NCBI GenBank assembly: GCA_028534125.1
Contig: CM052839.1
Coordinates: 41,106,001-41,170,000 of the forward strand
Direction of reading: 5' to 3'
DNA from: Lama glama
Lineage: Eukaryota
DNA: 64,000 bases
Shown: positions 4,650 through 42,675 of the stretch, one piece after another
Numbering within the stretch: position 1 is the first letter of the stretch
How the letters are laid out: each line of letters opens with the position of its first letter
Program-made: the position numbers and the translations under genes
Notes under the pieces: model-generated
Databases searched by the model: none
Told to the model about the DNA's origin: nothing
Seen by the model: the letters and a program-made list of their open reading frames with translations, nothing else

Positions 4650-4710
4650 ATGGCCTGGAGGGACTGGCTCCTGTGTCTGCCCCCAGCCATGCTGCTTCTC
4701 TGGGTCCCAG
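4650..4710 (+). CDS. CD300A: CD300A exon 1, signal peptide MAWRDWLLCLPPAMLLLWVP(G)
   Basis: 61 nt, donor CAG|GTGAGG, phase 1; LLLWVPG leader typical of CD300A. Confidence 0.85.
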
Positions 4711-7700: not shown

Positions 7701-10700
7701 CTTGGTCAAAAACAGCTGAATAGCAGCAACTTCATACGGTTCAACCTAATATTATTTACCAGGCATTTAACGCCCATTATCTCTTTCCGCACCGTCAAAT
7801 GTCATGTGAGGCTTATCAATCATCACCATTTTATAAATGAGGTATCTGAAGCTCAGAGAGGTTAAGTAACTTGCCCCAGGACACACAGCTGACAAGTCAC
7901 GAGCCACCGAGCATCTCAGGAAATGTCACACCTGTGACAAGGCTACATAAGGTCTTCTCTGTAGGGCATCTGCACACCCAGGCCGGGAAAGGATGCCTGA
8001 TGGGCCCCTGGGAGTGGGAGTGGTGGGAACTTGCGGTGATCAGCTTTGGGCTGCTGTGGACTGAGAGCTGCACTGGGTGGGAGAGGTGCTCATGCCGAAA
8101 TGTTTGTTGACAGCCTATGTGCTGCACACTTGTAGACATTGCAGATTTAAGAAGGAGGCCCCTGTCTTCCTGGAGCTTACATTTGAGTATCTTCAAGTGA
8201 TTTAAGAACCCAAAAGAGCAAGTAAAATTAAAAGAATTCTTTCCTTTTTTTGTGTATATATATATATATATTTTATTGAATAGAATTCTAACTCTAGGAA
8301 CAGAGAGCAAGCCACACCACCCCCTCCACCAATCTAGGGGCCCGATCTGGGGGGCTGGCGAGGACCTGTACACACACAAACTGCGTGTAGGGGCAGGGGA
8401 CAGGCCCTCTGCCTGGTGGCCAGCATTAACCACACGCCCCACTCAGTCTCCCAGCTCAGTAGCTGAGAACCGCCTGGGAGAATAGCAGATGAAAAACTGA
8501 GAAAGAAAACATGAATTTTCTCGAAAATTAAGTCTGCAGGAGCTGGGCAGACTGAAGTAAGCCCCAGGATGCAATGAAGGTTGTCATCAGTAAATTTGTG
8601 TGTGTGTGAATGATTTATTTTATCCACAAAATTTGCCGAGCGTGTGCAGTGTTTTTGTGACCTATTTAGCAGCCGTCTCCCTGCCGTGGTGTGTCTTCCC
8701 TTGGTGGGAACAGACTGGTGTGTGAGGCTTCTTCAGGTCTCTGAGATGCTCAGGGCTGTGGTGGCCCTCGGGGAGGGAGAGCTGGCTGCTTGGAGGCGAA
8801 TTCTAACTGTCCTGACAAGTTTCCAGGTGGGGGTTTCCTGGACAGTGAGGGGTGGGAAAGGCAAGGAAAGGAGGTTGGGTCTGGAGGAAGGAGCTGCTGT
8901 GATCACAATCTGGGGGGTGCTGGAGGGAAGGGGAGGACATCCCAGGTGTGGTCTGGCTGACGTGGGGGTGACTGATGTGAGATGGGGAACTTTGGAGGGT
9001 GACCCCCAGGGCGTCTCTGACCCAGGTCCACCTGATGAGGAGCCGGACTCGGCTGTGTTTTCCAGGCTGCTGGTCCCTGAGAGGCCCCCGCAGAGTGACG
9101 GGCGTCGTCGGGGGATCGCTGAGAGTGCAGTGTCAGTATAAGAAGGAATTCATAGATCATATCAAATACTGGTGCAAATCCCCATGTTTTTTACCGTGGA
9201 ACATAGTGGAGACCACAGAGTCAGAGAGAGAAGTAAGGAATGACCGCGTGTCCATCAGGGACCATCCTGCAAACCTCACCTTCACAGTGACCTTGGAGAG
9301 CCTTAGAATGGACGATGCGGGAACATACTGTTGTGGGATCGATAAATCATTTTCACTCGACCTCACCTCTGAGGTTGAGGTGTCTGTGTTCCCAGGTGAG
9401 CCATGCACACCCACGCCCCCTGTACCAGCAACAGGGTCACCTGAAGAGCCAAGACAGAAATCAGATCAGAGGCTTGGAGCAAACTCTGTGTGTGAGAGAG
9501 AAAGAGAGAGAGTCAGGGAGCTGGCATCGCTCCTCAATCCGGAGCGATGGGCGGGGCGGGTACTAGCCAGGGGAAGGGGAGGCTGGGAGAGCAGCGTGCA
9601 AAGGAGAGAGAGGAGGGCGTTCTGCGGGCAGACCTGCACAGGGGAAGGTGCGGGGGTGCTGGGTAGTGAAGGTGCCCAGTACACAGCGAGCGCTGACAGG
9701 TGACCGTCCGAGCTGCAGTTGAGACAGATGTCTCTGACTGGCAGCTTGTGGCTATGGCTGGAGTCTGGGGGTGGAGGTGACTTTGGGGCTCTCGGGGGGA
9801 CCCTAGCTTCATCAACAGGATGGAATCAGGACTGTTGGGGGCGGTGCCTGTCCCCTTTGGAAGTGCTCACTTGGCCCCTGGGAGGGGTCCTGGGGCCCCT
9901 TTCCAAGTAAGCATCTTGTATGAAATCAACCAAAAAAGGTGTTGGTGAGTGATGGGAGAGTCAGAGAGAGACCTCTGGGTCTGATCTGTGTTTCTGCAAC
10001 AGCATCAACACCAGCACCAATGTCAACCCCACCTACCACAACCAAGACCTCAACAACCACATCCAGGATGTCAGCTCTGTCATCCACCGCCCCGGCCACA
10101 GTGAGTGCCACTTACAGTGCCAGCAGCCAGGAGGAGTCCCAGCCCGTCCTGGACCAGAGGTAAGGTGCCTTAGTCCCCGTGTCCCAGAGGTGAGCCTCCT
10201 CCCCTGGCCAGGTGGTCCATCTGGGGTCGGGAGCCTGGTCCCTGTTGGCTGGGGGCCTCTGGTTCTCTTTGTACCCAGGCTGGAAGCAGGTCTGATCCCC
10301 TGACTGGGGTTGTTGGGGCCACGCTAGGCCTGCCCGGGGCTCCAAGAGAGGGCTCAGGCTGGGCACAGGTTGGGGAAGGGGGATGGAAGGAGAGTGGCCT
10401 ACTAGGAACGGGCTAAACGCCCCACGTGTTGTCCCCATTTGTTCCTCACACCCTGTACCATTATTACCCTCATTTTATAGGCAAGTGAACGGAGAGGGTA
10501 AGGGCCATGTAGCTACCAGAGGCAGGCTGGGCTCCCAGCCCAAGTTTGTGTGATTCCAAAGTCGTAGGCTCTCTCGTCTAAACTCGTGATTCTTGACCCT
10601 TTTTTGGGGTCACAAAACCCCAGGAGAATCTGGCAACATTTATAGATTCTCTCCCCAGAAAAATGCATGCTATCATAAACCACCTCTGGGGTTCACAGAC

Positions 10701-13700
10701 TCCCTATTCCGACAACACCTGGTGTCCTGCAAGTCGATTCTCGCACTGACTCCCCACAGTTAGCACAGAACCCTCGGTCCCCTGAGACCCAGAAGACTCA
10801 GTCCCGTCAGACAGCCTGGCTGCAGACGCCAGCGCCCTCTGGGGATTCCCAGGCCCTTACGTTTCTGACAAACTGGCTACAACGTTGGGAGTTCCCATGA
10901 CCCCCCCCTTGGGTTGATCTTTGTTACAATAACTCAGAATGCAGAGACGTGCTATACTTAAAATTATAGGTTTCTCACAGAGGACAAAGGTCAGGACCAG
11001 CCAGATGAAGAGACGTGCAGGTCAGGGTCTGGGAGGGTCTGAATGCAGCGCTCCTGTGCCCGTTCCCAGTGGAGTCGGGGGGGCATCACCCTCCTGGGAC
11101 ACTGATGTGTTCACCAACCAGGAGGTTCCTCCCAGCCTTGGCGTCTATAGTTTCAGCTGAGGTTCATTACACAAGCCCGATTGACTGCATCATCGCCCAC
11201 GTGAATGACTTCAAACTCCAGCCCCCTTTACTTCCCTGAAGGTCAGGCTAGCTCAGAGCCCCAGATCTTCAATCACATGGTCGGTCCTTCCGGTGGCCAG
11301 CTCCCATCCTGAGTCACGCCATCTCTTAGCAAAAACTCAGGCAAATCCAAGGGGCTTATGAATAGCAAAGACACTCCTGTTACTAGGAAAATTCCCAGGA
11401 TTTACAGCCTCCCTTCCAGGAGCCAGGGGCAAAGGCCAGTTGGATTCTTTTTTTATATGTAGTTCCCTGTGCCAGACAGTAGGTCCTTGTTGTCTATCTC
11501 TTTTATGTATAGTAGTGGGGAAGGTTCTTAGGTCTACTGTGTGTGTATGCGGGGGGATTTAGGTTGGTGGGGGTGTGTCAGAGGGAGACTTGATACCGTC
11601 TACATTTTTTCCCACGTGACCTAGTCTATCTGTGGAAGCAAAGAGGGGAAGGCGTGCTTGGCCGCCCCACCCACCCCGCCCTTTTCCCCTCCAGGCTCCA
11701 AGTGCTGCTGCCCTTGTTAGCAGTTCTGCTGCTCCTGTTGGGGGGCATCTCATTGCTGGCCTGGAGAATGGTTCAGAGACAGAGCAAAGGTGAGTTACTC
11801 CTATACCCCACTCCCCACCCTGGAGGGCCAGGCTCTGCCCACACCCTCTTATCTTCGAGGCTCTGTGTCCTGGTTCCCCGGAGTGGTCATTGGATGCATC
11901 CTCTGAGACCACACATCCTGGGTGACCCTAGAGGCGGACCCCAGAGGAAGTGTCCCTAGGGTGGCAGATCCCAGCTATGGGAGGGGGCTTCTTGGAAAGA
12001 AGCTTTTCCCACGGTGGGCCTAGGGTGGGTGCTCAGGAAGCAATGTCCTTCTTCTGTCTAAACCCTTCTGTGACCTCCCACACACTCCGAAGTCCAGGCC
12101 CCCATAGGACAGTCAAGGCCCTCTGCAGTCTGGCTCTGCCTACCCCTCTGGCCATCCGTTCGCTCTGGAAGGCAGCCGTTCCCAGCTTTTCATCACTTGG
12201 CAAGAGCCACGACCTCAGTCTCCCCTTCTGAGTTTGCTCTGGGCAGCTGGGTTGCCTGCCCCGCCCTCTTTCCCCAGCTCACTCCTGGTCGGCCCTAAGC
12301 GATGCTCTCGGACTTCCTTTCCTCGGGGACCTTCTCCTGGCCCCCAAAGAGTAGCGTGGGGGCCCCTCCTGGGTGTCCTCTGGACCGCCACCATCATAGC
12401 CCTTTTCACAGCAGATTGTCTTCCTTGCCTGCCTCCGCACCAGCCCGTGCAACTTCTTAAGGTCAGGGACCCTGACTCCAGATGGCACACAATCAGTATT
12501 TGTTGAATGAATGTGGCATGTAATAGCTCCAGGGAGCTCCAGGCAGCCTGCAGTCCAGCCGCTCTCCTCTGAGCTCAGGTTAAAGAGAGGAACCTGGAGG
12601 ATGCACCTAGCCACTTATCTGGTGCTCAGTGAGTAGACGCTCAATCAGCACTTGAGTGAACTAACTGAATAAGAGGAACCGAGGGAGGAGTGGAGTTGTG
12701 AGCTTGCTGTTGGCTGGAGGCCCAAGGCCCACCTACAGGAGGGCAGCCATCTGCCTGGGGTGGGCTGTGAGCTGGAAGTCTCCTTCCTGTTCTAAGGGTT
12801 CCTTTTTTTCCCCCCAAAGATGCTATTTATTTTATTTTATTTTTAAATTTTTTTGCAGGGGAAGGTAATTAGGTTTATTCATTTTAGGGGCGGGGGTAAT
12901 TAGGTTCATTTATTTATTTATTTGTTTGTCAGTGGAGGTGCTGCAGATTGAACCCAGGACCTTGTGTATGCTAAGCACATGCTCTACCCCTGAGCTATAC
13001 CCTCCCCACTATTTTTAATTTTTTTCAACAGTGATACTGGGGATTGAACCCAGGACCTCGTGCATGCTTAGCATGCACTCTGCCACTGAGCTACCCCCGA
13101 CCCCCCCACCCCCACCTCCCACCCGATCTTTTCTAAGAGTTATTGATTCCATGCGCATAGGGCTCTTGGGAGAATGTTTGTTCATAGTTATGGAAGCTGA
13201 GCCTTTCAAGGCTGCAGTGAGACTGGAGGTTGCTAACTGGGAGTTGGTCCCTACTGGGGCCGGCCAGGGTCGGGGGACCCTGCCTTACCCTCTCATCTCC
13301 AGTACCCCATGGGGCCCAGCCTCTCCCCTCCAGCGCAGCTCAGGCCTTTCGGAGAGAAATCAGACTCAGTGTATTTGAGCTTGTTGATGGAAAGAAAAAA
13401 AAAACCCACTTCTTCCCCATCTGCTTCTCCTGTATCATGTTCGGGAAACTCTGCCTAAACTTCAGGCCACGCTGCCCCCCACATGGGGTTTCCCCAGCCT
13501 GGACGGCTTCAGATCTGTGGGTCCCAGACATCTCCTTGGCGCCCTTTCGCCTGATTAGTTCCCCATGCCCCGCCTTCTAAAAGAGGGGTGTGTGACTGCT
13601 GCAAAAAACTGGAAAAATAAGTAGAGGCACAAAGAAGGAAATAAATTCGCCATAATAATGATGGAAATTCCCACCGGCCGGAGAAAGCTCACCACTGGTG

Positions 13701-16700
13701 TTTGTGCTGCGTCGAAGTCTCTTGCTTATCTGATTTCTTAAAATGTTTGCTGCATACCGTGATTCCACTTAGATTTTCCTTTTCTTTTTTCTTTTTTCTT
13801 TTTTTTGCACTTCACAGATTGTATGATTTCCCCTGCTAATAGATGTTCTAAAAATTCCTGACTGCGGGTTGACTCGTGTGCGTGGGTTGCAGCTTGTTGA
13901 ACTAACCCTTGTTTAACAGGAGAAAGGCTTTCTGTTCAAGCAGCCAGTCGCTCCCCCTGCTTTGCGAGTCCCAGCTCCTGTGTCCTGAGCGCGTCTGGGG
14001 CTGTCTTCCCCGTGCCTCTGTCCCTGCCCCTCAGCCTGACGCCTGCCCTGTCCCCCGACTCCTGGTTCTTCCCCTCAGCCCAGTCTTGTCATTCACTCGC
14101 TCACTCACGCAGCAAAGCTGACGGAACTGCTGCTGTGTGCCAGGCCCGGTGCTGGGCTCTGGGGGACACGGTCTTGACCAGGGTAGACTGGGTTCCATCT
14201 TTAGTGGGCTTCCTGCCCAGCTGGCTGGCTGTCACCCAGCTCCCTCAATGCCACCTTCCTTCCTCAGTGATGGACTCCATGTCCTCCTCACCAGCCCCCT
14301 TCTTTCTTCCCATCAAAACCCCTGTCCCAGCCGAAGAGAGGGAGGGGGCGTGGAGCCGGGGGGACAGCATTTGGAACAAAACGTGTTCATACCTTATAGT
14401 GCCCAGTGGCGTGTTCTGTTGTGTTGACTGTCGGGGATCAGCAAACACTTCTGTCGTACAAGGTCTCTTGTCTCCTGGCTGTGGGTGTCTCACCTTTGAC
14501 TTTGGGGCTCCCCGAGTGGACAGTGTCTTTCTCTGCAGTGTTTAATGGAGTGGGCTCTAGAGTCACCTGGCTGTGCCCCTCGGCAAGGGCATTCTGGCTG
14601 CGTGGGCACCATCTGCTTGCCACCAGCTCCTGGGGCTCCAGGTCGAAAGGGCCGGGGAGCGAGGCACAGAGCTGCGCTCAGAGGCAGGACATCTGCAGAC
14701 CAACACTGCAGGTGCCAGAAGCAAAAGGCTGTGCGGCCTGACCAGTGATCCATCAGAGCTACCGGGACCTCCCATCTGGGAGGGACAGACCCCCAGGAAG
14801 GCAGTCGGAGCAGATGACCCTGGTGACTTCATGTAGTTTGACGCAGTTCTAGGTCTCTGCAAGGACACGTCCCTTCATTTTTTTCTTTTAAAAAAACTTC
14901 AGGGCTTGTTAAAACACTGGTTAAAACACTCCACCCCAGCATTTATGATTCAGTACATCTAGGGTGGGGCCTGCAGATCTGCATTTTTTAAATTACAGCA
15001 AAAATACATTAAAATACTATAAAATTTGCCATCTTAACCATTTTTAAAAATTGTAGTATGGTTGATTTGCAATGTTGTTAATTTCTGGTGTACAGCAAAG
15101 TGATTCAGTTATACATATATATAAAAATATATGTATATATTCTTTTTCATTATAGGTTTTCATGAGCTATGGAATACAGTTTCCCATGCTATACAGTGGG
15201 ACCTTGTTGTTTATCCATTTTGCATATAGTAGTTCACCATCTGAACCATTTTTAAGTTTACAGTTCAGTGGTGTCAAGTATATTTACTTTGCTGTCAAAG
15301 AGATCTCCAAAGCTTTTTCATCACGAAGACAGCTCCTTTTAAATGAGTTTCCTTCCTTTCTTGCCTTCTCTCACCTGGGAACTTTTTTTTTTAATAGAGC
15401 TACTGGGGATCGAACCCAGGTCCTTGTGCCTGCTGAGCGCACACTCTACCACTGAGCTATTCCCCACCCACCGGAAACATTTTTCTGAGTGACTTTTGAG
15501 GACTAGGTTTGTTTGGCCCCTCTCCCCAGGCTGGAGCCTTCCTGCCCATTCGTTTATTCACTCATTTATTTCCTCATTCACTAATTCACCCACTCAGCAA
15601 GCCCTTGAGTTCCTACCATGCTGCAGACCTGAAGTGACAGGTCCCCAGAACTTGTCCGAGGGCAAGGCCTTCCTCCAGGTGGATCACAGGGTGCCCCATC
15701 CCCGTCTTGTTCTGGGATTCGACCTCCTTACTCTTCTCTTGTCTCTTTAGCTGGTAAGAATCCAGAACCACCCCAGAACCCCAGTCAGGTAAGAAAGGCT
15801 CCGGCAGGAGGAGTGTCGGGTGGCTGGGGGGAACCGCAGAGGATGCTGGCGGAGCAGGGGGGTTGAAGTGTCCCTCGGGCAGTGGAGGTCTGCATGGATC
15901 CTACGTGGATGGGGCGAGGTGCTCCTCCACAGCGGGAAGAACGATGCCTGGGAGATCTGTCACTGGGTCTTGCCACGGGTTCTGGCCAGTCCCTTCCCTT
16001 CCCAGGGAAGGGGGAATGAGGGAGGGTCCTCCCAGCCCAGCCGCTGACCTGACCATTCAGATACTCCCCAGAGAGGACCAGAGTGAGGGAAGGGAGGGGG
16101 GGAAGGCTGGGGCTGGGGCTGGGGCACCCAGAGCACTGAGAGAAAGGAGATGTTTGCAGAGAAGCAGGGATAGAGGCCTCTCTGGGCTGGACCACGGAGG
16201 GGCTCTGTGGACACCCACCAAGCCCCGCACCTCCTACCCACCCCAGGCTGCTGAGCAGAGTGAGCCCTGCTATGCAAATGTGGAGCTGCAGACGTGGCCC
16301 CCTCCGGCAGAGCCCCGGCAGCCTGCCTGGGAGGCGGAGGATGTGGGGTGCAGCACGGTGGTGAGTGCAGGGGCTCAGCTCCTGTAACGGGGAGGGGGGA
16401 CCCGGGCTCCCCGGTCTTGTGCTTCCCTAGGACGAGGACGCACAGAGAAAGGGGCAAGTGCAGATTCTGCTGAGCTCAGTGTCTTTGTAGCTGGGGATGG
16501 GGGTGGGAGATGAGGGGCTATTGGGATGGCAGGTGGCAGTCAATAGTCAATAAAGTACAGCATTTATTAGGCCCCTACTATATATCACGTACCCAGCATT
16601 AAAACCTCTGACTTCTCACTGTTTTGGTCCCATTGTCTCTGGTATGATCCCCGCTTCTCCGATTTGTATCAATGACCCCCTGTAGGTCAGCCCTTAGGCA

Positions 16701-17273
16701 CAGTCATTGTAAAGTAAACTAATGGAAGAGGCTGCCCACCCCTCCAAGGTCGTGACCCGTTAGTGGAAGAGTTTCGGCTGAGGGGTCAGTTGTCAGAGAA
16801 GATGAGGGAGAAGGTTTCCACATCAGACACGTGGCCCTGGGACCAGCCACATCCGTTTTTCTAACTTGGTGACTAATGATCTCAAAGTGGGTCCCGGAGA
16901 CTCCCCCAGCTCTGGTGCCGGGGACTTTGTGCTGTGTCTTGATCAGATGGGGTGGAGCAGGTGGGTGGACAGGATCTTGGAGCCCAGTCCTTGTGGGAGA
17001 AAGAGGACAGGGCAGTGGGGAAGTGTAGAGCCACCTCCTTCCCAGCGGAGACTCCCCGGGTTCCCCTCTGGCGTGCCCCACCCTCCAGCCTAAGCTGGGG
17101 GTTCGTGCTCCCCGACCCCCCTGTCTCTGTCTCTGCAGAGGCCCCCCGGTGAAAGTCTTCACTACACCACGGTGGTGTTTGACTCACCAAGACAGGATTC
17201 CAAGGCCGACAGGACATCCTCCCCGGGGCCCCAGAAGCAGGAGCCAGTGTACAGCCTGGTTAAGAAGACATAA
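4650..17273 (+). CDS. CD300A: CD300A inhibitory receptor (CMRF35-like molecule 8), 309 aa; join(4650..4710,9066..9395,10003..10159,11695..11789,15751..15788,16247..16360,17139..17273)
   Basis: All introns GT-AG with matching phases (1,1,2,1,0,0); leader, IgV, S/T stalk, uncharged TM, tyrosine-motif tail; tail collinear with human CD300A (LLAWRM, QAA.QSE..YAN.EL, LHY..VVFDS, YS.V.KT*); opposite strand to the rest of the cluster as in human. Confidence 0.92.
5713..6154 (+). mobile_element. Internally deleted Tigger1-type (TcMar) DNA transposon
   Basis: Begins TA|CAGGCGTAGCTCG and ends GAAGTATGGCTG; both ends resemble Tigger termini joined directly. Confidence 0.75.
7141..7272 (+). repeat. GA-rich low-complexity tract
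   Basis: Degenerate (GA)n/(GACA)n. Confidence 0.8.
7790..7900 (-). mobile_element. MIR fragment
   Basis: CCATTTTATAAATGAGG..TGAAGCTCAGAGAGGTTAAGTAACTTGCCC..CACACAGCT core. Confidence 0.7.
9066..9395 (+). CDS. CD300A: CD300A exon 2, IgV domain
   Basis: TTTTCCAG acceptor, G|GTGAG donor, 330 nt; [37 protein letters not shown]. Confidence 0.95.
10003..10159 (+). CDS. CD300A: CD300A exon 3, mucin-like stalk
   Basis: ASTPAPMSTPPTTTKTSTTT...VLDQR; CAACAG acceptor, AG|GTAAGG donor; phase 1 to 2. Confidence 0.9.
10700..11460. mobile_element. MER21-like LTR element
   Basis: CAGACGCCAG, AACTGGCTACAA..GTTCCCATGACCCCC and CCAGGAGCCAGGGGCAAAGGCCAG motifs recalled from the MER21 family; ends approximate. 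Confidence 0.55.
11695..11789 (+). CDS. CD300A: CD300A exon 4, uncharged transmembrane segment
   Basis: RLQVLLPLLAVLLLLLGGISLLAWRMVQRQSK; AG acceptor, G|GTGAGT donor; phase 2 to 1. Confidence 0.93.
12825..13098 (-). mobile_element. Two adjacent tRNA-Ala-derived SINEs (vic-1-like)
   Basis: Two reverse heads (GAACCCAGGACC..TGAGCTA..CCCC) and a duplicated GGTAATTAGGTT tail module. Confidence 0.85.
15050..15230 (-). mobile_element. L1 3' end fragment
   Basis: TACAGCAAAGTGATTCAGTTATACATAT..TATTCTTTTTCATTATAGG pattern. Confidence 0.7.
15383..15465 (-). mobile_element. tRNA-derived SINE (vic-1-like)
   Basis: Poly-T followed by reverse A/B-box head. Confidence 0.8.
15751..15788 (+). CDS. CD300A: CD300A exon 5, cytoplasmic (AGKNPEPPQNPSQ)
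   Basis: Strong pyrimidine tract + TTTAG, donor CAG|GTAAGA; aligns with human AGDHSELSQNPKQ. Confidence 0.9.
16247..16360 (+). CDS. CD300A: CD300A exon 6, cytoplasmic (AAEQSEPCYANVELQTW...DVGCSTV)
   Basis: 114 nt, phase 0-0, CCCCAG acceptor and GTG|GTGAGT donor. Confidence 0.92.
17139..17273 (+). CDS. CD300A: CD300A exon 7 (RPPGESLHYTTVVFDSPRQDSKADRTSSPGPQKQEPVYSLVKKT*)
   Basis: CTCTGCAG acceptor, canonical ITIM LHYTTV, distal YSLV, TAA stop. Confidence 0.93.
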   Translation, partial: RPPGESLHYTTVVFDSPRQDSKADRTSSPGPQKQEPVYSLVKKT

Positions 17274-19805: not shown

Positions 19806-19845
19806 TAGTTTAGAGGGTTCATTTGGCTTATTAAAGTGAAGTCAA

Positions 19846-19987
19846 GGGGGAGGGTATAGCTCAGCGGTAGAGCGCATGCTTAGCATGCATGAGGTCATGG
19901 GTTTGATCCCCAGTACCTCCAGTTAAATAAAAAAATAATAATAAATAAAATTAATTACCTCCCTGCCCCCCAAAAAACAAAACAAAA
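19846..19987 (+). mobile_element. Full-length vic-1-like SINE
   Basis: GGGGAGGGTATAGCTCAGCGGTAGAGCGCATGCTTAGCATG head; 13-bp TSD TAAAGTGAAGTCA (19832-19844 / 19988-20000). Confidence 0.92.
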
Positions 19988-21285
19988 TAAAGTGAAGTCA
20001 CGTCATGACCTTGGTCCTTTGGGCCTGGAAGACATTCCATGTGTCTCTCTAAATTTCCTCTTTCCCTGCCCTCCAATTTAAATTAAGTTGAGTTTTATTT
20101 TAAGCTAACTTGTCCTCACAGAGTCAGGCCCCACTCTCGTGCTGGCAGCCACGCCATTCTCTATCATTTCCTCATTCCTTTCTTTACCATCCATTTATTA
20201 ACGGCCTACGGGGCACCAGGTGCTGTCCACCCACTGGGCGGTGGGGAAATAACAAGATAAGAAGGTTCCTGCTTTGCAGCGTTCCTCTTCCTCCTTCTGC
20301 TCATCGCCACCAATAACAAACGTCGGAGAGAGGGCTCAAGTGTTTTCGAAATTTAAAATGGGAAGCCTGCTAGAAGCGCTTACGTCTATGCCCTCACTGT
20401 ACATGGGACACCGGGAGGGAAATGGTAGCACGAGGACCACCGTCCCCACAAGGATGTTCCCACTGCGGGGTTCCTTTGCTCCTGGAATTCAGGATTGGGT
20501 CCGCTCCTCCTGGTATAGCCAAGCCCTGACTTCCTTAGGGTCCCTTATGGACCCAGTCTTGTCAGATGATGTGCAAATCCAAGGTGTTTTTTTTTTTTTA
20601 GTCTAAAAAGTTTATTTTTGAGTCTAAAGGGCTTAAGAGAGTTATTCAATAGAGGAAAGACTGGAAAATCCTTATAGCTGCCACCTGCAGCACCCAGATG
20701 GGGAGAGAGTGTCGGCTTTCTATTATCCTGGTGGTATAATCTGTGTTTTTTTCCTCACTGCTGGTTTGTGTGGGTGGCAAATCCCAGCATGTCAAGGGCC
20801 CACGAGAAGTGCTCATCACCAGGCGAGGCACCAGAAGACACACCAAGTCCCCCCAGCTCCTGTATGAACTTGGGGGTCAGGTGGCCTCCATGGAAATGAT
20901 CACTAATGGGTGGGAGGCGATGTCACTGTCAGAGGGCAAACTAGATTCTACGGCCACGGCCACGCACAGAGGACCTCCCAACTGGGGACCCTGGGCTGTG
21001 CCTTGTAGACGTTCTTCCTCTTCCTGCTCCCAGGTTTGTGCCGGCAGCGCCACATCTTTCTTTGGCTGATAACACTTGAGGATGCCCTAAAGTTCAGGCA
21101 TATCCCCCCTGGCAACAGGGAGGCGAACTGAGCTCAAAGGCCTCCAGCACCTGAGGGCCAGTTATTCCCCGATAAATCTAAAAGATTTAGGCTGCTGAAT
21201 AAAGTCTTAATACTTTTTTTTTCAACCAGGGCCACCATCACCCGGGTTTATCCCTAGAACCTGGAAAGGCATCATGGCTTATACA

Positions 21286-25410: not shown

Positions 25411-25684
25411 AGAGCAATGGGCATCTGCTGTCACCATCTACCTCTACTGACTCTTGGTTACAAAATGCGCTAAAATCACACATGAAGAACCATCTGAGTC
25501 TCCGGCTGTTTACGGGCCTCTGCACCAGGCTCCTAAGAGAGACACGTCAGCTGGAAACGCTGTCTTAGCTCTAGCGCTAATTCATCTCATTTCTATCTTT
25601 CTCCCAACCCTGAGCAGTGGGCATATTAAGCAAGTTTTGCTTGACAGCTTTCACCGGAAGCCAGGGAAATTCCCAGAAGCGTGA

Positions 25685-25690
<6 letters not shown>

Positions 25691-25730
<40 letters not shown>
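25691..25730 (+). repeat. (GT)20 microsatellite
   Basis: Direct observation. Confidence 0.97.
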
Positions 25731-27834: not shown

Positions 27835-28216
27835 CTACCCAAAGAAGTGGAAACGAGGGGCTGGCACTCCAGCCGGCAGTGATGCATCGGAAGGGCCCTG
27901 AGCGCTGTCCTCAAGCTGGGCAGGGCAGGGCAGGTGTCTGGCCAGCCTCCAGGGTCCCCAGCCACAGTCACCGCATCCTGACCGCTCAGAGGTGTTTCTT
28001 CCACGGCCCGTGTCTCCTCTGGAAAGGGGGTCGGGGGCTGGAAGTTTCTGCTCATCCATCAGTGTAAGGTTCAGTGGGCCAGAGGACAGGTTTACATAGA
28101 CGGGCTGTCCCCTTTGCTCCTCAGGGTCCCTCTGAGATCCCTTCAACCAGAGGTTGATACCAACCAAGACGAGCAAGATGGGCACTTTCACAAACGCCAG
28201 GAGCACGTAGTGGGTC
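27835..28216 (-). CDS. CD300LB: CD300LB exon 4, TM with Lys and cytoplasmic tail with YVN motif
   Basis: CTCACAG acceptor; RTHYVLLAFVKVPILLVLVGINLWLKGSQRDPEEQRGQPVYVNL...HFFG*. Confidence 0.85.
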
Positions 28217-31200
28217 CTGTGAGAGCGGGCAGAGTGGTCAGAGCCCTGGGCCCCTCCAGGCCCCGTCACCCCAGAGCCCTGACACCGGGGTGCCTTGGCC
28301 GGCTTAGCAAAGCCTGTGACCCTGGACCTGCCAGCCCCACTCCCAGGTCTTCCCCGGCAACCACCAGGGCTCCTCCAAATAACCTCAGGCTTTTGGTTTC
28401 GTTCTGTTCGAGGCCCACCTTCCTTTCTAATTCACCTTTGTCCGAAGCGCCGACAGGTCACCCACGACAGGCCGATTACCTGCCTGTGTGACTCACGGCT
28501 CCCGCTAACGCCACCTCCGGGTTGCCACATCACCCTCCCTGCTGACTTACATCCTAGAGATTTGTGTCTTGTCTCCCGGGAACCACTAGGTCATCAGTGC
28601 TTTTTGTTGACAATCGAACGGGCAGAGGATGCTGGCAGAGGAGAGGTCTGCAGAGGGGTTTTCTGGCCAGGCGAGCACAGGAAGATGGACAATGGGGAGC
28701 AATGTGGGCTGGACGGACACGGTGGCCGGGCTTTGGGCCTTGACTCTGACTACGCTGGGCTCTGGCATCTGGTGACCGCACAGGAGTCCCCAGGCTTGGC
28801 TACTCCAAAGGAGAGGCCCCAGGGAGGGGTGGGAGAAAGGACCACAGTCACTCACCTGATGTAGGAGACGGAGGACATGGCCATAATGCTGTTGGCCATT
28901 GTCCCGGAGGGCAGGCTCTCTGATGTGCTCAGAACAGCTCTCTCTATACACAGGCAAAGTTGGAAGTTGGCCACAGGTTATCGGCACAGACTGGGGGCTT
29001 CGTGACCCCCTCATAACGCCACCCCCGCCTGCCCGCCCTCACGGGAGCCCCCCTCCCTGGATCAGGAGACTTCATCTCTTTGGATTCAGCCCCTCCAGCT
29101 TCTCCCCTTTCTGTCAAGTCATCTGAATCACAGCACACGTTTTCCCTCATCATTTTCAGGTGTGACAAGAAGAAATAAAAGTTAAGCAGAAGGAAGCACT
29201 GCAGTTTATTCCGGGGGTGGGGAGAAATCTTTTTACACCCTCTCTGCTGACCTTGTAAGTAGGACTTTTAGTTGAGGGGTCGGGGGGAGGGGGGAACCCC
29301 TGGTCCTTTCTACTCAAACAGAGCCTGCACACGGCTCAGGTACAGACAGTTCCAGGGGTGGGGACAGCTCAGTAGTAGAGCACGCTTAGCATGTACCAGG
29401 TCCTGGGTTCAACCCCAGTACTTCCCATTAAAAAGACTAAAAAAAGTTAAAAATTTAGAAGGAGGAAGGTATAGCTCAAGTGGTAGAGCACACACTTAGC
29501 ATGCACAAGGTCCTGGGTTCAATCCCCAGTACTGCTTCTAAAATTAAATACATAAATAAACCTAATTACCGCCCTCCCCCCCCCAAAAAAAAACCCTTAA
29601 AAAAAAAAAGAACAGATAGTTCTGGAAATGGGGCCTCTAGTTATTGGGGTGGGTAACGAGGTGGGAGGACTCCAGAAGGCTGGTGACTGAGAGGATCCAT
29701 TCCGGTGAAATAGTGAACAGTGGCAGTGATGGAGGAAACATCTTTATGAGAAACTATGAAGATGGTTTATGTGAGCAGCCTGGTCCCCAGAGAGGAGAAG
29801 CACCGAGAATGCTGGAACAACCCTGCGTTGTCCAGGTTGCTGGGGCTCAGCACTGGGAACCCCTGGGTTACCCCAGATGCCCCTTCCCTCCTCCATGTAA
29901 CGACAGGTCTGGGGTGTGACTACCAGAGTTTGACCACCTCCTAGAGTGAGGCCCTGGGACATCACTGCACGTGCCTCGGAGAGGCCTCAGGGACGGGATG
30001 GGGCAGCTGCGCTGGGCTGCTCCTCTGCCTTGGCTCCTCCCACTTCCTTCCCATCTGTCTGTCTGTCCCTCGTTCTCTTTCACACTTGCTCTCAGGCACT
30101 ACCTTCTACCCTTGGAGAGGAGCAAGGCAGAAGCCCTCACTCTTCCAGTCCTGAGCAGTGTAGACGAGGCAGCTCTTACCTGGGACAATGGTCACTTTAA
30201 TTTTTGCCCCAAGGTCAGTCCCAGTCTTCTCAATCCCGCACCAGTAAGTGTCGGTGTCATTCTGTCTGAGCTCCAGCATGGTCACCATGAGCACGCGGCC
30301 TTTCTGGTCGTCCCTGATCGACACATGGTCCTCCTTCACTTCTTGCTCTGATCCTTCAGTTTGGACGAGGATCCTGCATAACTCCCACCTTTCTCCTCGG
30401 CACCACCACTTCCTGTAGGTCTCCCATCCTGGGTCATAGCGACACTGAATGGTCACTGATCCCTGCTCTACGCCTTGCACGGACTCTGGGCCTTGGATGG
30501 AGAAATAACCTGGAAAAAAGAATCCTAAGTTACAGCTCCTGACAGCCTGAGCCAGGACACACAGATGTCCTTCCTGGCCAGCCCCCAGTCGATGCCTCAT
30601 GTTTACCTTCTCCTTTGTTCAGTGTCCCAGTCCCCACCAGCTCCCTAGGAGATGGTGTTCTGGCCCATTTGGTTCCCCATCTCCCTACACCTGCTCACGG
30701 CATCTGATTTTCTGACACTTTTTCCTTGTCTTCTCAACACTGTTCTTGCTGGCCTCCTCCTTCTTCTCCAATGACTCTGCCCCCGAGGTCTCTACTGATT
30801 TCTCTTCTCTTCCTCTCTCTTTAAATCTTGATGTAAACAGTGGCATGTTGATAACTATTTAACAACCAGCCATCTGGGGGGAAAGTCTCCAGTCTGGCAC
30901 ATTTTCCAGTTTCTACAGTATAAATTTTCCCACCATGGCTGATTTCAGGCTACCAACGCGATGTCACTGGACACAGAGTTGAGAAGAGATGTGCCACATC
31001 TGAGCCAGTGTGAGGCAGCGACACCTCCGGGGAGCCCCGAGCTCTCCCTCCAGCCTTCATCTGGTCTCACTTTATTGTAACCCCACGGAGTGATTTTCCA
31101 CTCCCCCGCCTAGATGCTGATGAATCCCAAATCCGTATTTGTAAGCCAAATTCCCCCTCCGCCGTCACTGTCCACGGACAGCTCATCTCACACCAGGAAG

Positions 31201-34200: not shown

Positions 34201-35349
34201 TAGCAGGGTGTGATACCCTTCTTCTTGGCCTCCAGGTGAGCTGGATGTTGGGATAAAGACAGAGAACAGATGGGGGTCCTGGAACTCAAATGCAAAGCTG
34301 GAGCCCTAGAGGAGGTGCAGACTTTCTGCACCGTGGTCCTTTGGGAATTCTGAGCCACTTGGAGCCCCACTTAATAAACGTGGCCATCCCAGAGAAGCCG
34401 CTGCCCTCACAGCTGGTCTACGGGTGGCGTCACAAGGTTTCTGCATCATCAGTAAAACCAGCAATGGCAGTGGTACTTAGGGGGAAGGCCCACAGCCCTC
34501 ATCTGCTTGTATCCATGTGAATAGTGGAGTCCTGTGTCATTAGCACTAAAAGGGCTCAGGGACCCCCACTCACACCAGAAGCCCATGTCTTAGAACAAGG
34601 AGGGACTGGCCGAGTCACGCGCCCCAGTCGGGACTGGAGCTCGGCTCTCCGATTCCTTGGCCGTGCTCTTTCCCATGGTCCCTCAATGGACCATCTGTAC
34701 GTGTCAGGTGGTCAGTCCCCAGACCTGGAGAGAAGGCTGTGTGACCCACACACACTGCACACATGGTGCGAACTCCCACACTGTCCCCTTGTGTCCTCTA
34801 AGTGTGGGCAGTGGTTTTCCACAGAAGAGAAGCCCCTCCCGTCGCCCACTTAGGTCCCTGAGCAATTTCCTCTTCAAAAGTCTCAGTTCCAGGGCATGAT
34901 GTCCCGGGTCCTTCATAATCCTGGCTTTCGCGTTCCCAGCCTCACTTCCAACCAGTCACCCCAAAGCTCTTTGCAAACGGAGCGGTCCCTCTGCACAAAC
35001 CCACTGTCCTTTCTCAAGCTGCTGACCCTTGGCCATGCGGTTCCCTCTCTTGGGAATGCTTTTCCCGCTTGGCTCTTTTTTTAATTTTTTCCCTGCTCCT
35101 CTTTGAATGATCAGTCCTAGTTCTCTTTTCCCTTCATGTCCTCAGAGCCTGATGCATGCCTGGCATAAAGAGGCCCCCAGCACGCTTTTGCTGAATAAAT
35201 GAACGAAGCTGCCTCCCATTTCCCCCGTGTGACACCTCTCTCAGTACCGAGCCGGACACCCCGTCACCCCCGACCCCCACCCTAGCCCTGCCCCAACCAC
35301 CGCACTCACCTGGGAGGCTGAGAAGGAGCAGAGCGGGGGGCAGCCACAT
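27835..35349 (-). CDS. CD300LB: CD300LB activating receptor (CMRF35-like molecule 7), 279 aa; complement(join(27835..28216,28856..28943,30180..30509,35310..35349))
   Basis: Leader MWLPPALLLLSLPG, IgV FSIQGPESV..GWETY.KWWCRG, TM HY.LL.FVKVPILL.LV and tail KGSQR.PEE..QP.Y.N match human CD300LB; GT-AG introns, phases 1,1,2. Confidence 0.92.
28856..28943 (-). CDS. CD300LB: CD300LB exon 3, stalk ERAVLSTSESLPSGTMANSIMAMSSVSYIR
   Basis: TGTATAG acceptor, CAG|GTGAGT donor, 88 nt, phase 1 to 2. Confidence 0.85.
29355..29610 (+). mobile_element. Two vic-1-like SINEs in tandem or nested
   Basis: Heads at 29355 and 29461; flanking near-TSD ACAGACAGTTC / ACAGATAGTTC. Confidence 0.85.
30180..30509 (-). 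CDS. CD300LB: CD300LB exon 2, IgV domain with all four cysteines
   Basis: 330 nt, TTTTTTCCAG acceptor and G|GTAAG donor; QC..WWCRGERWELC..DTDTYWCG. Confidence 0.95.
30838..31030 (+). mobile_element. MER63-like hAT element
   Basis: CCCACCATGGCTGATTTCAGGCTACCAACGCGATGTCACTG..GAAGAGATG; second copy at ~55875-56050. Confidence 0.65.
32604..32739 (+). mobile_element. vic-1-like SINE
   Basis: tRNA-like head, AATAAATAAAC tail, near-TSD AAAATCTAACGCA / AAAATCGAATGCA. Confidence 0.88.
33880..34215 (+). repeat. Degenerate (TG)n tract
   Basis: Direct observation. Confidence 0.85.
35310..35349 (-). CDS. CD300LB: CD300LB exon 1, signal peptide MWLPPALLLLSLP(G)
   Basis: CACCATG Kozak context, CAG|GTGAGT donor, 40 nt. 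Confidence 0.92.
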
Positions 35350-36421: not shown

Positions 36422-36530
36422 GGGGAGAGGGTATAGCTCAGTGGTAGAGTGTGTGCTTAGCATGCACGAGGTCCTGGGTTCAATCCCCAGGACCTCCATT
36501 AAAAATAAATAAATAAACCTAATTACCCCT
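36422..36530 (+). mobile_element. vic-1-like SINE
   Basis: GGGGAGAGGGTATAGCTCAGTGGTAGAG..GGTTCAATCCCCAG..AATAAACCTAATTACC. Confidence 0.9.
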
Positions 36531-37506: not shown

Positions 37507-37512
37507 TTTATT
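37507..37512 (-). terminator. Candidate poly(A) signal AATAAA, 2 nt after the CD300C-like stop
   Basis: TGA CC AATAAA on the minus strand. Confidence 0.45.
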
Positions 37513-37514
37513 GG

Positions 37515-37701
37515 TCAGAGGTCATTACCATCCACCAGAGCAGGCTGTGGTCCTGGGTCGGGATGGATGGGCAAGAGATGTTGCTGGTTCCCAGAGCTCC
37601 TCTGAGGCCTGTTGACCCAGAGGACAGCACCGAGCATGCCCAGGAGCAGGGGCACCTTCAGGAAGACCAGGAGCAGGAAGTGGACGCTGCCCAGCAGGGA
37701 C
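37515..37701 (-). CDS. CD300C: CD300C-like exon 4, TM with Lys and tail
   Basis: [40 protein letters not shown]...DL*; CCCACAG acceptor. Confidence 0.85.
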
Positions 37702-40496
37702 CTGTGGGAGACACGGTGACAGACAGTGAGTGGCATCCTCAGAGGGTGGCCCTGGTGCCCCCGACTTTCCCCTACCCCAGTGCCCAGGTCCTGAGGCCAT
37801 GACAATGCACATAAAGATCACCCCTGGGCAGGCAGCCCCACCCTGTGTGCCTCTGCCCCTTTCTCTCTGCTTAATAATTGCCCTTGAGAATTAGGACTGT
37901 GGACATAGGCAGGGCATGGCCACTGGATAGATGCAAGGGAGACCCATCCAGACGGGACCTGGACAGGAGGATTTCTTCATAAACCTCCACATTCGGGAGG
38001 TACCCTATCTCGGGTACAGGAATCAATAATAGACTTATTTGTCTGATGTGTGCTCTCCTATAAATAGCAGTTCCCTTTAAGGAAGGAACTGTTTGTTTTA
38101 CTCACAGGGAGAAACTGGTACTGCCTTGGTACCTCCAAAGGTCCGTAGCAGTTGATGGGATAAATGAATGACCTCCCTCAGCTCCATCCTCCCTCAAGAG
38201 CCTGGATTCTTCAACAGGATGACACTTTGACCGGGGCTTGGGAAAGGCAGGGGTCGGAGTGCAGGGGCCACCGATGCCCAGACCATCTGCTTCCTGCCCT
38301 GCCCTGGGCAGGGGTCCTGCAGGTTCCTTTTGTAGAACATTTGTACTCACTTTTCCCTCTGCCTGGACCCTTTTTTCCTGCACATACATGAACGCCAGGC
38401 TCCCCAAATCCTGCAGATCTCCACTCAAATGATGATCAGCGAGGCTTTCCTGATTATCGTGTATTAAACAGCAAACCCAGTCATCTTCCCACACAGGCTC
38501 TCGCCAAACCTAAGTGATGACTGTCTCTCCATCACAAATTGCCATATTTATATACTAACTACGTGTTGATTTGTTCATGGTGTGAATCCCCCCTTAGATC
38601 ACAACTTCCGTCAGAGGAGGTTCCTGCCCGGGTGGTTCGCAACTGTGTCCACTGAAGAGCGCCAGGCACTTTGTAGGATCTTCACAACTAGGTGTGGAAT
38701 TAAATGAGGGACCTAGAGACAGGCGACCCAAGTCCCTCTACCCTGCCTGCTGACCTCGCAGAGAAGTCACCCAGGTACCGAAACCCTGGGATGCGGGCCC
38801 CTTACCGAGAGTGTTGACCAGGATCGGGGGTCTCCTGCCCAGACACGGTGCTCCAGGTGGGTGCTAGCAGGGTCGTGGGAGAATCTGGGGTGCTTGTGGA
38901 CCTCTCGGGGCTGGCGGCTAAGGGAGAAGTACGAGTCAGGCCCAGTGTCCTCCCCCTGGGTCCCCGCTCTACATCACTGGTGTGGCTCTGCTCACACAGG
39001 CAAGGTCACTCAGGTCATCTGGAGAGACATGCTGTGTTCGGCATCGCCCTGTGGTTGCACCCAGGCCTGACCTGCACCTTGGGCCCCTCCTCAGCCCCTC
39101 TCCAGGTGCACCCTGGCCAGGTGGGCACTTTGAGATGCAGAGAAAGAGAGGGGGCAGGGTCAGCCCGTCAGCCCGGCGGGGCAAGGTGAAGTCCCCCAGA
39201 GGGACAGAGAAAGCCCAGCGCAGGGGTCTGGGCTTCTTTTGTGCTTTCCTCAGGGTTACAACAGAAGGCCTCAAAACCGCAGGAGGCCCTTCTGTTTCTG
39301 GAAGGATCATTGGTGACCTTGGGGCCAGCACAAGAGCAGGACATACGCTAGGAGCTGGGGACGGGGCTGGCGAGGTCAGCGCAGGGCGTGGACTCTCAAG
39401 CAGGCACCACTCAGGGCACAGAGTGAGGGCGCATCTCACATCCTCGGGGCCCCAGGGTCCGGGCTGGCCTGTGTGGGGCGGGGTCGTGTGAGAGTGAGAC
39501 CAGCAGATGCCGTCATGGGCAGGACCTAGCACAGGTCCAGAAAGAGACACGGGGTCCCCTTCAGAGTGGACGTGGCCCTTGCAGGACAGCAGGCAGCGTA
39601 GGTGCCCAAGTGCGGGACACTCTCCGCTGTGGGCCAGGAAGTTGCCAGCCTCACCTATGTCGGGGGGAGCCCCAGGGCAGGCCCCACACGGGGACAGAGA
39701 TATACACGTGGGCAGGCGCACACACCGACTCCGTGTCCCGAGCCACTGCCCAGCCCCCTCCTCGCATCCTTGTCCAGCCTTTCTGTCCCACTTCTTCTCT
39801 GAGGGTCAAGGTGTGACCGGCCCTGGTGCTGGTGCTGGGGGGGGCAGTGGGGGAGCTCACCTGGGAACACAGACACCTCAACCTCAGAGGTGAGGTCAAG
39901 TGAAAATGATTTATCGATCCCACAACAGTATGTTCCCGCATCGTCCATTCTAAGGCTCTCCAAGGTCACTGTCAAGGTGAGGTTTGCAGGATGGTCCCTG
40001 ATGGACACGCGGTCATTCCTTACTTCTCTCTCTGACTCTGTGGTCTCCACTATGTTCCACGGTAAAAAACATGGGGATTTGCGCCAGTATTTGATATGAT
40101 CTATGAATTCCTTCTTATATCGACACTGCACGCTCAGCGATCCCCCGACGACGCCCGTCACCCTGCGGGGGCCTCTCAGGGACCAGCAGCCTGGAAAACA
40201 CAGCAAGTCTGGCTCCTCATCAGGTGGACCTGGGTCAGAGATGCCCTGGGGGTCACCCCCCGAAGTTCCCCATCTCACATCAGTCACCCCCCATCAGCCA
40301 GACCACACCTGGGGTGTCCTCCCCTTCCACACCTGGAAGCTTCTCTGCCTGCCCTCCCTCCCTCCTGTTGCGCTGCTGCTCACCCACCTCCACCCCCGCC
40401 CCTTCCTCTCCCCCAAGAAGGGCTGAGCCCCTCACCTGGGACGTGGAGAAGCAGCAGAGCTGAAGGCAGCCATAGGGCCCCATCCCTCGGGGTCAT
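37515..40496 (-). CDS. CD300C: CD300C-like activating receptor (CMRF35-like molecule 6, with CD300H-like N-terminus), 229 aa; complement(join(37515..37701,38806..38917,39861..40190,40436..40496))
   Basis: Open frame, GT-AG introns, phases 1,1,2; stalk and WVNRPQRSS tail resemble human CD300C; syntenic position next to CD300LB; IgV paired with CD300A. Confidence 0.78.
38806..38917 (-). CDS. CD300C: CD300C-like exon 3, stalk [38 protein letters not shown]
   Basis: CTTCTCCCTTAG acceptor, CG|GTAAG donor, 112 nt. Confidence 0.85.
39861..40190 (-). CDS. CD300C: CD300C-like exon 2, IgV domain nearly identical to that of CD300A
   Basis: 330 nt, 7 mismatches against 9066-9395. Confidence 0.92.
40436..40496 (-). 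CDS. CD300C: CD300C-like exon 1, signal peptide [20 protein letters not shown](G)
   Basis: 61 nt, CAG|GTGAG donor, phase 1. Confidence 0.87.
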
Positions 40497-42563: not shown

Positions 42564-42675
42564 GGGTGGGGAGGTAATTTCTTATTTATTTGTTTTAATG
42601 GAGGTACCAGGGGATTGAACCCAGGACCTCATGCATACTAAGCACATGCTCTACCACTGAGCTATACCCTCCCCC
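42564..42675 (-). mobile_element. vic-1-like SINE
   Basis: Reverse head and tail, flanked by imperfect duplication CCAATAA..ATCTTATTTT. Confidence 0.88.

What the first reader, a model, noticed from the sequence alone, without database searches (positions are those of the whole stretch)
8926..9400. IgV exon of inhibitory CD300A is ~98% identical to that of the activating CD300C-like gene: sharply bounded gene-conversion tract
Seen: 9066-9395 (+) and 39861-40190 (-) differ at only 7 of 330 nt, giving 4 aa changes (R/S, Q/R, C/R, F/L). Similarity extends about 140 nt into the upstream intron (8926 pairs with 40328) and falls off right after the donor GTGAG; leaders, stalks, TM and tails are clearly diverged. 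Established: CD300A/CD300C are paired receptors, but the human IgV pair is noticeably less similar. Inference: recent concerted evolution limited to the ligand-binding exon, keeping the activating receptor matched to the inhibitory one, as expected under pathogen pressure. Five of the 7 differences fall in codons that change the amino acid.
Basis: partly seen in the sequence, partly recalled or inferred. Interest (0 to 1): 0.75.

Follow-up and report, generated by a model that had tools for sequence, protein, structure and literature searches.

The report
CD300A/CD300C-like IgV exon gene conversion
In a camel-family genome, the ligand-binding exon of an inhibitory immune receptor gene and of a neighbouring activating one has been copied between the two genes, a real but already described way in which such receptor pairs stay matched.

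Summary
9066-9395 (+) and 39861-40190 (-) differ at 7 of 330 bases. High identity runs from 8926 to six bases past the splice donor. Beyond that the two genes cannot be aligned better than shuffled sequence.

Copy A is an intact CD300A (CLM-8) gene with an uncharged membrane segment and an ITIM tail. Copy B is an intact CD300C/CLM-6-like gene with a lysine in the membrane segment and a short tail.

Interlocus gene conversion is the best explanation. At 7 sites both window copies share one residue and both Camelus copies share another; no site groups by gene. Trees that hold the CD300A domains together are rejected (p-AU 0.004 for camelids, 4e-6 for all).

This is not new in kind. Conversion of this same domain between CD300A and CD300C is published for primates (PMC12447643). 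The mouse pair is 92% identical (PMC2194075). Seal and badger pairs are equally alike.

There is no sign of positive selection between the copies (pN/pS 0.29). The finding is a new member of a known kind, of modest interest.

The parts
8926..9065 (+). Converted part of intron 1 of gene A (CD300A), 140 bases up to the acceptor
   Evidence: 7 mismatches and 2 one-base gaps against 40328-40191; no alignment upstream of 8926
9066..9395 (+). IgV (V-set) exon of gene A, phase 1 at both ends
   Evidence: 7 of 330 bases differ from copy B. The translation matches PDB 2q87 CMRF35-H at E 1.8e-28 and 9z0m CLM-6 at 5.1e-28. Best named protein is Vicugna pacos CLM-8.
9396..9401 (+). Splice donor GTGAGC, the last bases of the high-identity tract
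   Evidence: identical in both copies; after it 25 of 36 columns match to 9436, then nothing above shuffles
39861..40190 (-). IgV exon of gene B (CD300C/CLM-6-like)
   Evidence: tblastn with Camelus ferus CLM-6 P0007
40191..40328 (-). Converted part of intron 1 of gene B (138 of its roughly 245 bases)
4650..4710 (+). Gene A leader exon (ATG to donor GTGAGG)
   Evidence: 20 of 20 residues identical to alpaca CLM-8 P0006
10003..10159 (+). Gene A stalk exon
   Evidence: 49 of 51 residues identical to P0006; AG/GT borders
11695..11789 (+). Gene A membrane-segment exon, no charged residue in the hydrophobic run
   Evidence: 30 of 31 identical to P0006
15751..15788 (+). Gene A cytoplasmic exon 1
   Evidence: 12 of 12 identical to P0006
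16247..16360 (+). Gene A cytoplasmic exon 2
   Evidence: 38 of 38 identical to P0006
17139..17273 (+). Gene A last exon with one canonical ITIM (LHYTTV) and the stop codon
   Evidence: 43 of 44 identical to P0006
40436..40496 (-). Gene B leader exon
   Evidence: 20 of 20 identical to Camelus ferus CLM-6 P0007; 12 of 20 residues and 45 of 61 bases identical to the gene A leader
38806..38917 (-). Gene B stalk exon
   Evidence: 32 of 33 aligned residues identical to P0007; 11 of 51 columns identical to the gene A stalk
37515..37701 (-). Gene B membrane segment (Lys inside) plus short tail and stop; AATAAA follows
   Evidence: 60 of 61 identical to P0007

Best explanation
Two neighbouring genes of the CD300 cluster of a South American camelid lie in opposite orientation about 31 kb apart. 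One is the inhibitory CD300A. The other is an activating CD300C/CLM-6-like gene. A tract of about 476 bases was copied from one gene to the other by non-allelic (interlocus) gene conversion. The tract holds the last 140 bases of intron 1, the whole IgV exon and the splice donor. The ligand-binding domain is therefore almost the same in both receptors, while leader, stalk, membrane segment and tail stay gene-specific and give opposite signals: an ITIM tail in A, and in B a membrane lysine that would pair with an adaptor such as DAP12.

Shown: the tract, its borders, the intact gene structures, and clustering of the IgV by lineage. Inferred: the molecular mechanism (mismatch-repair copying during recombination), its repetition in both camelid lineages, the age of the last event, and any selective reason. 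With remembered mammalian rates, 2.1% divergence suggests very roughly 5-10 million years.
For: Tract and borders.

Similarity covers intron and synonymous sites, so protein-level constraint alone cannot explain it.

Gene structures are intact with canonical AG/GT borders, and each exon matches the named camelid CLM-8 or CLM-6 protein.

Of 96 compared IgV columns, 81 are invariant. At 7 columns both window copies differ together from both Camelus copies. No column groups by gene, and 8 are other variants. Against other mammals, Arg at site 5 is derived in the lamine copies and His at site 8 is derived in the Camelus copies, so both lineages were homogenised after their split.

IgV tree of 63 rows: window A + window B + alpaca CD300A 99/88*, all camelid rows 98/93*. 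The AU test rejects a camelid CD300A clade (lnL 30.1 lower, p 0.004) and a clade of all 30 inhibitory-type rows (lnL 695 lower, p 3.9e-6).

Gene B against Camelus ferus CLM-6: 11 of 96 IgV residues differ, against 2 of 114 elsewhere (Fisher p 0.007).

The same process is published for primates (PMC12447643, sections 12 and 13 read).
Against: The run index only shows that 14 of the 24 listed runs hold half or more of the words of 37400-40700. That does not test the tract.

The intron part is more diverged than the exon: 9 of 140 against 7 of 330. This is p 0.026 with gaps counted and p 0.13 on mismatches only. One single event is therefore not assured.

Donor and recipient cannot be told apart.

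The tree has few columns (113) for 63 rows. I chose 59 of the 120 listed proteins by hand, and some are automatic gene models. 10 of them could not be typed as inhibitory or activating.

The window A-B sister branch itself is weak (86/0).
Confidence: 0.85

Rival explanations
1. Assembly artefact. The IgV exon of one gene, or an allelic haplotype of it, was pasted into the other gene during assembly, so the near-identity is not in the animal.
For: The two copies share runs of up to about 110 identical bases (positions), which can mislead assemblers. The window has two 500-N gaps. Two residues peculiar to B, seen as the words YWRK and NLTLT, occur in none of the 120 listed proteins.
Against: The copies are not identical: there are 7 exon and 9 intron differences. 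The tract ends at different, non-repeat sequences. The Camelus ferus CLM-6 protein, a public record of another genus that I take to be a gene model from a separate assembly, has the same build: a B-type leader, an A-like IgV, and a B-type stalk and membrane segment. Near-identical inhibitory/activating pairs recur in seal, badger and bat records.
Confidence: 0.06
2. No sequence transfer. The two exons are alike only because the ligand-binding domain is under very strong purifying selection since an old duplication.
For: pN/pS between the copies is below 1 (0.29). Both receptors are said to bind the same lipids in humans (PMC4819222, passages).
Against: 140 intron bases are 93-94% identical while the neighbouring intron is unalignable. 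Synonymous divergence is only 3 differences over 64 sites. The domain is not conserved between lineages (11-12 of 96 residues differ from Camelus), yet it changes in step in both genes (7 sites to 0).
Confidence: 0.02
3. One conversion in the common ancestor of camelids followed by slow divergence, rather than repeated lineage-specific events.
For: Camelus and lamine pairs are both about 95-97% identical. The exon and intron parts differ in divergence, so an older layer exists.
Against: Derived residues are shared by both paralogues within one lineage only: site 5 in lamines and site 8 in Camelus. The distance between paralogues (3 of 96 residues) is far below the distance between orthologues (11-12 of 96).
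Confidence: 0.05

Closest known systems
[quoted passage not shown]
   Same: The same gene pair and the same domain (about 112 residues of the extracellular Ig domain). Sequences cluster by species or family instead of by gene. Motifs are shared by both genes within a lineage. Tail and membrane segment stay diverged. The second disulfide is lost in some lineages.
   Different: That work is on primates and at protein level. Here the case is a camelid and the DNA borders of the tract are seen: 140 intron bases, the exon and the donor. The membrane residue here is Lys, as in 7 of their primates, not the human Glu. Whether B is the strict orthologue of human CD300C is not settled.
Mouse MAIR-I / MAIR-II (CD300a / CD300d) paired receptors (Yotsumoto 2003, PMC2194075; passages read)
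   Same: The inhibitory ITIM receptor and the activating partner have Ig domains 92% identical. The partner has a membrane Lys and a short tail.
   Different: No conversion tract was described in the passages I saw. Different order of mammals.
Human CD300a / CD300c (PMC3219710 and PMC4819222; passages read)
   Same: The extracellular domains are called highly homologous (80% identity for the whole extracellular part). Antibodies could not tell the two apart.
   Different: Human CD300c uses a membrane Glu. I could not read a figure for the human IgV exon alone. Figure 5 and the supplementary tree of PMC12447643 were not visible to me.
Conversion between other paired immune receptors such as Siglec-5/14 and Siglec-11/16 (recalled, no call)
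   Same: The exon or exons for the ligand-binding domain are homogenised between an inhibitory gene and a neighbouring activating gene.
   Different: Other gene families. Not examined here.

Membership tests
Interlocus gene conversion tract (concerted evolution of paralogues) | A stretch of high identity bounded by diverged or unalignable flanks in two old paralogues | tested here: met
   7/330 exon and 9/140 intron differences. Flanks score no better than shuffles (62 of 200 and 69 of 200 shuffles reach the observed score).
Interlocus gene conversion tract (concerted evolution of paralogues) | Identity also at non-coding and synonymous sites | tested here: met
   The intron part is 93-94% identical. 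There are 3 synonymous differences over 64 synonymous sites in 96 codons.
Interlocus gene conversion tract (concerted evolution of paralogues) | Inside the tract paralogues group by lineage; outside it they group by gene | tested here: met
   7 lineage sites against 0 gene sites. AU tests give p 0.004 and 3.9e-6. Outside the tract B matches Camelus CLM-6 at 112 of 114 residues and is unrelated to A.
Interlocus gene conversion tract (concerted evolution of paralogues) | Both copies confirmed in the animal by reads that span tract and unique flanks | not testable with these tools
Only an index listing of runs is available.
CD300A / CLM-8 (inhibitory) | Single V-set Ig domain of the CD300 type | tested here: met
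   PDB 2q87 CMRF35-H at E 1.8e-28. The homologues carry PF07686.
CD300A / CLM-8 (inhibitory) | Uncharged membrane segment and a cytoplasmic tail with ITIM (I/V/L/S)xYxx(L/V) | tested here: met
   The membrane exon has no K/E/D/R in its hydrophobic run. There is one canonical ITIM, LHYTTV. Two further tyrosine motifs (PCYANV, PVYSLV) miss the -2 position (peptides, read by eye; consensus as given in PMC2194075).
CD300A / CLM-8 (inhibitory) | Orthology to named CD300A proteins over all exons | tested here: met
   Outside the IgV, 192 of 196 residues match alpaca CLM-8 and 182 of 196 match Camelus bactrianus CLM-8.
CD300C / CLM-6 (activating) | Charged residue in the membrane segment, and a short tail without ITIM | tested here: met
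   There is a Lys in the membrane segment of the last exon, and the tail has no tyrosine. 18 of the 20 activating-type proteins were not checked one by one. Of the 16 printed, 14 have Lys and 2 have Glu.
CD300C / CLM-6 (activating) | Strict orthology to human CD300C | tested here: inconclusive
   The order A(+), X(-), B(-), C(-) fits the human gene order as I recall it. However, alpaca P0027 has the same leader and a tail more like ruminant CLM-6, so camelids have at least two CD300C-like genes.
CD300C / CLM-6 (activating) | Association with DAP12 or FcR gamma and an activating signal | not testable with these tools
   Needs expression and co-precipitation.

The most novel reading that the evidence does not exclude
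The IgV exon of CD300A and its activating partner behaves as a shared, fast-evolving cassette across Laurasiatherian mammals. It is re-homogenised independently in many lineages, with the tract pinned at the splice donor. At the same time it changes about six times faster between camelid lineages than the rest of the activating gene. Within South American camelids, distinct IgV haplotypes may be segregating or being exchanged: alpaca CLM-8 differs from window A at 8 of 96 IgV residues but at only 4 of 196 elsewhere. Loss of either cysteine of the WCxxxC pair in different genes would be part of that turnover.
Probability: 0.3. Interest if true: 0.45.

Novelty: new member of a known kind. Interest (0 to 1): 0.3.

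Why it matters
The finding extends a process described in primates, and implied in mouse and human, to camelids and, by the tree, to carnivores, bats and pangolins. It also gives the DNA borders of one tract. For camelid immunology it means that reagents against the CD300A ectodomain will almost surely also bind the activating partner. It further means that annotation by best hit to the IgV cannot tell the two genes apart. It does not open a new kind of biology.

Tried and rejected
Read support. I asked for runs and tried to lay four of them on gene B.

Earlier notes of the scan held nothing near this place or under these words.

A figure for the human IgV pair was not obtained. PMC3597807 is not held. 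PMC4819222 and PMC5011699 gave no number. PMC3219710 gives 80% for the whole extracellular domain only. In the PDB search the CD300A and CLM-6 chains ranked 9th and 10th behind polymeric Ig receptor chains, so their alignments were not printed.

Direction of transfer was considered and dropped. Gene C aligns only from 12 bases upstream of the exon, so it cannot polarise the intron part. No camelid DNA other than the window was on hand.

Positive selection between the copies is rejected as unsupported.

The alpaca protein P0027 as the 'unconverted' orthologue of B is rejected. Its stalk (25 of 35) and membrane exon (33 of 40) fit B much worse than Camelus CLM-6 does, and it is not encoded in the window.

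All comparisons were exon by exon.

The claim that the camelid case is not in print rests on the held library only: only PMC12447643 holds CD300 together with gene conversion or, in substance, concerted evolution; one unrelated paper.

Full report
WHAT IS THERE

The window holds four CD300-type genes (tblastn with four named camelid proteins; borders read).

Gene A lies on the + strand. Its exons are a leader at 4650-4710, an IgV exon at 9066-9395, a stalk at 10003-10159, a membrane segment at 11695-11789, and three cytoplasmic exons at 15751-15788, 16247-16360 and 17139-17273. All introns are GT-AG. The membrane segment is uncharged. The last exon carries one canonical ITIM.

Outside the IgV, gene A is identical to alpaca CLM-8 (P0006) at 192 of 196 residues and to Camelus bactrianus CLM-8 (P0008) at 182 of 196. 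It is therefore CD300A of a South American camelid close to, but not identical with, the alpaca record.

Gene B lies on the - strand. Its exons are a leader at 40496-40436, an IgV exon at 40190-39861, a stalk at 38917-38806, and a membrane segment plus tail at 37701-37515. It is also intact. It has a Lys inside the membrane segment, a short tail without tyrosine, and AATAAA just after the stop.

Outside the IgV, gene B matches Camelus ferus CLM-6 (P0007) at 112 of 114 aligned residues. Two more genes, X and C, lie on the - strand.

THE OBSERVATION

The two IgV exons differ at 7 of 330 bases and 4 of 109 residues. The self-comparison of the window gives one outstanding hit, 8926-9436 against 40328-39821 (94.5% of 511 columns).

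The 140 intron bases before the acceptor carry 7 mismatches and 2 one-base gaps, and upstream of 8926 nothing aligns. After the donor hexamer, identity drops to 25 of 36 columns up to 9436. Beyond that, 400 bases on either side score like shuffled sequence.

Leader (12 of 20 residues), stalk (11 of 51 columns) and membrane segment (8 of 61) are diverged or unrelated. The third IgV exon of this type, in gene C, is 74% identical to A and 68% to B. The homogenisation therefore concerns A and B only.

WHY GENE CONVERSION

Constraint on the protein cannot explain intron identity or the low synonymous divergence of 3 differences over 64 sites in the 96 codons that I could use.

The domain is not slow-evolving either. 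B differs from Camelus ferus CLM-6 at 11 of 96 IgV residues but at only 2 of 114 elsewhere (p 0.007). A differs from alpaca CLM-8 at 8 of 96 against 4 of 196 (p 0.02). For A against Camelus the contrast is not significant (12 of 96 against 14 of 196, p 0.19).

The changes go in step in both genes. Of 96 columns, 81 are invariant, 7 separate both window copies from both Camelus copies, none separates CD300A from CLM-6, and 8 are other variants.

I polarised these sites against 32 other cetartiodactyl rows. Arg at site 5 is derived in the lamine copies, since 30 of the 32 have Ser. His at site 8 is seen in no other row, so it is derived in Camelus. Each lineage was therefore homogenised after the split. 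Parallel change is the only alternative.

I built a maximum-likelihood tree of 63 IgV rows. These were 59 proteins that I picked from the 120 listed, plus four window exons. I left out 61 proteins, mostly isoforms and two-domain models. The tree puts window A, window B and alpaca CD300A together (99/88*) and all camelid rows together (98/93*).

Inhibitory and activating rows also pair by lineage in monk seal (100/98*), badger (100/98*), Eptesicus (100/80*) and pangolin (96/79).

Holding the four camelid CD300A rows together costs 30.1 log-likelihood units (p-AU 0.004). Holding all 30 inhibitory-type rows together costs 695 (p-AU 3.9e-6).

LIMITS

The tree has 113 columns for 63 rows. Ten rows could not be typed as inhibitory or activating. 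Many rows are automatic gene models.

The sister branch of window A and B is itself weak (86/0). The intron part is somewhat more diverged than the exon (p 0.026 with gaps, 0.13 without). That fits nested or repeated events but does not prove them. Donor and recipient are unknown.

From then on I left that stretch and its exact copy in A out of every search and worked beside them.

The run index lists 24 runs. 20 of them hold part of 37400-40700 and 14 hold half or more of its words, across 11 studies. That does not test the tract itself.

Three points argue against a chimera. The copies differ at 16 positions. The flanks are unique sequence. The Camelus ferus CLM-6 record, from another genus and presumably a separate assembly, shows the same mosaic build.

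WHAT IS KNOWN

[quoted passage not shown] They place it in about 112 residues of the extracellular domain, in several primate lineages including humans.

That paper also reports clustering by species or family, lineage-specific motifs shared by both genes, Lys in place of the membrane Glu in seven species, and loss of the second disulfide in lemurs and lorises.

The mouse pair MAIR-I/MAIR-II has Ig domains 92% identical, and the activating member has a membrane Lys and a 20-residue tail (PMC2194075, passages). For humans, 80% identity of the whole extracellular domain and cross-reacting antibodies are stated (PMC3219710, passages). Figure 5 and the supplementary tree of the 2025 paper, which would give the human IgV figure, were not visible to me.

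In the held library, only that one paper combines CD300 with gene conversion, and no paper treats CD300A in camelids. The camelid case, the DNA borders and the spread over Laurasiatheria thus seem unreported. They are extensions of a known process.

Among typed inhibitory/activating pairs within a genus, the window pair (93 of 96) is among the highest. It is matched by monk seal (110 of 112), badger (106 of 111) and Camelus (104 of 109). Ruminant pairs are much lower (Bos 69-75%). The pair is therefore not exceptional.

The seven differences are 4 non-synonymous and 3 synonymous. On the 96 usable codons pN/pS is 0.29, so nothing suggests adaptive divergence.

By comparison with the other camelid rows, A gained Arg and Gln, and B gained Arg (for Cys) and Leu.

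The lost Cys is the first of a WCxxxC pair that is general in these domains. It is also missing in pig, peccary and one serow protein, so its loss need not inactivate B.

VERDICT

Gene conversion limited to the IgV exon and the adjoining intron is the best explanation (0.85). It is a new member of a known kind, of modest interest.

Noticed in passing
window 28090-35349 (-): A further CD300 gene (X). It has a leader near 35349-35300, an IgV exon at about 30510-30181 (about 40% identical to A/B at protein level), and a membrane exon at 28212-28090 with a Lys and a tail tyrosine in a YVNL context. From memory it looks CD300LB-like. It is not converted.
   Followed up: partly
window 50845-57179 (-): A further activating-type CD300 gene (C). 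It has a leader at 57179-57123, an IgV exon at about 53902-53552, and a membrane exon at 50988-50884 with a Lys. Its IgV is 74% identical to A and 68% to B at DNA level, so it lies outside the homogenised pair.
   Followed up: partly
window 40081-40083 (-), codon 36 of the IgV exon of gene B: The first Cys of the WCxxxC pair is Arg in B. The alpaca CLM-8 record P0006 instead has Tyr at the second Cys. The first Cys is also absent in three pig, one peccary and one serow protein.
   Followed up: partly
protein P0027 (Vicugna pacos, named CD300H-like); not in the window: Its leader is 20/20 identical to the leader of gene B. Its IgV, stalk and tail differ, and no exon for them is in the window. 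Its tail resembles ruminant CLM-6 tails. Camelids thus have a second CD300C-like gene, outside the window or in one of its two 500-N gaps.
   Followed up: partly
window 37515-37590 (-): The tail of gene B and of Camelus CLM-6 runs 22 residues past a GNQ motif, at which the hippopotamus CLM-6 protein ends (ENQ). This looks like a lost stop codon in camelids.
   Followed up: no
window 16340-16360 (+): In the window and in alpaca CLM-8, a tyrosine motif of the CD300A tail reads VGCSTV, where Camelus has MVYSTV. So the lamine protein has one tail tyrosine fewer.
   Followed up: no
protein P0006 against window 9066-9395: Alpaca CLM-8 differs from window A at 8 of 96 IgV residues. Six are private to it and five of these lie within about 20 residues. 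Elsewhere it differs at only 4 of 196. This could be an allelic IgV haplotype, a short conversion from an unseen donor, or errors in that record.
   Followed up: partly
protein P0010 (Camelus dromedarius, named CD300H) against window 9396-9560: This 379-residue model reads through intron 2 of CD300A. Its residues after the IgV match the read-through translation of the window. It is therefore an intron-retaining model of CD300A, not CD300H.
   Followed up: no
window, e.g. 12887-13104, 19844-19988, 29355-29594, 36419-36535, 42553-42679, 55736-55877, 60362-60508: There are many copies, on both strands, of a dispersed repeat of about 100-140 bases, 74-91% alike. It is presumably a SINE. None lies at the borders of the tract.
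   Followed up: no
window 58231-58497 and 59334-59601: An inverted repeat pair, 84% identical over 269 columns.
   Followed up: no
window 25681-25730 and 63110-63170: Dinucleotide simple repeats that match each other at shifting offsets.
   Followed up: no
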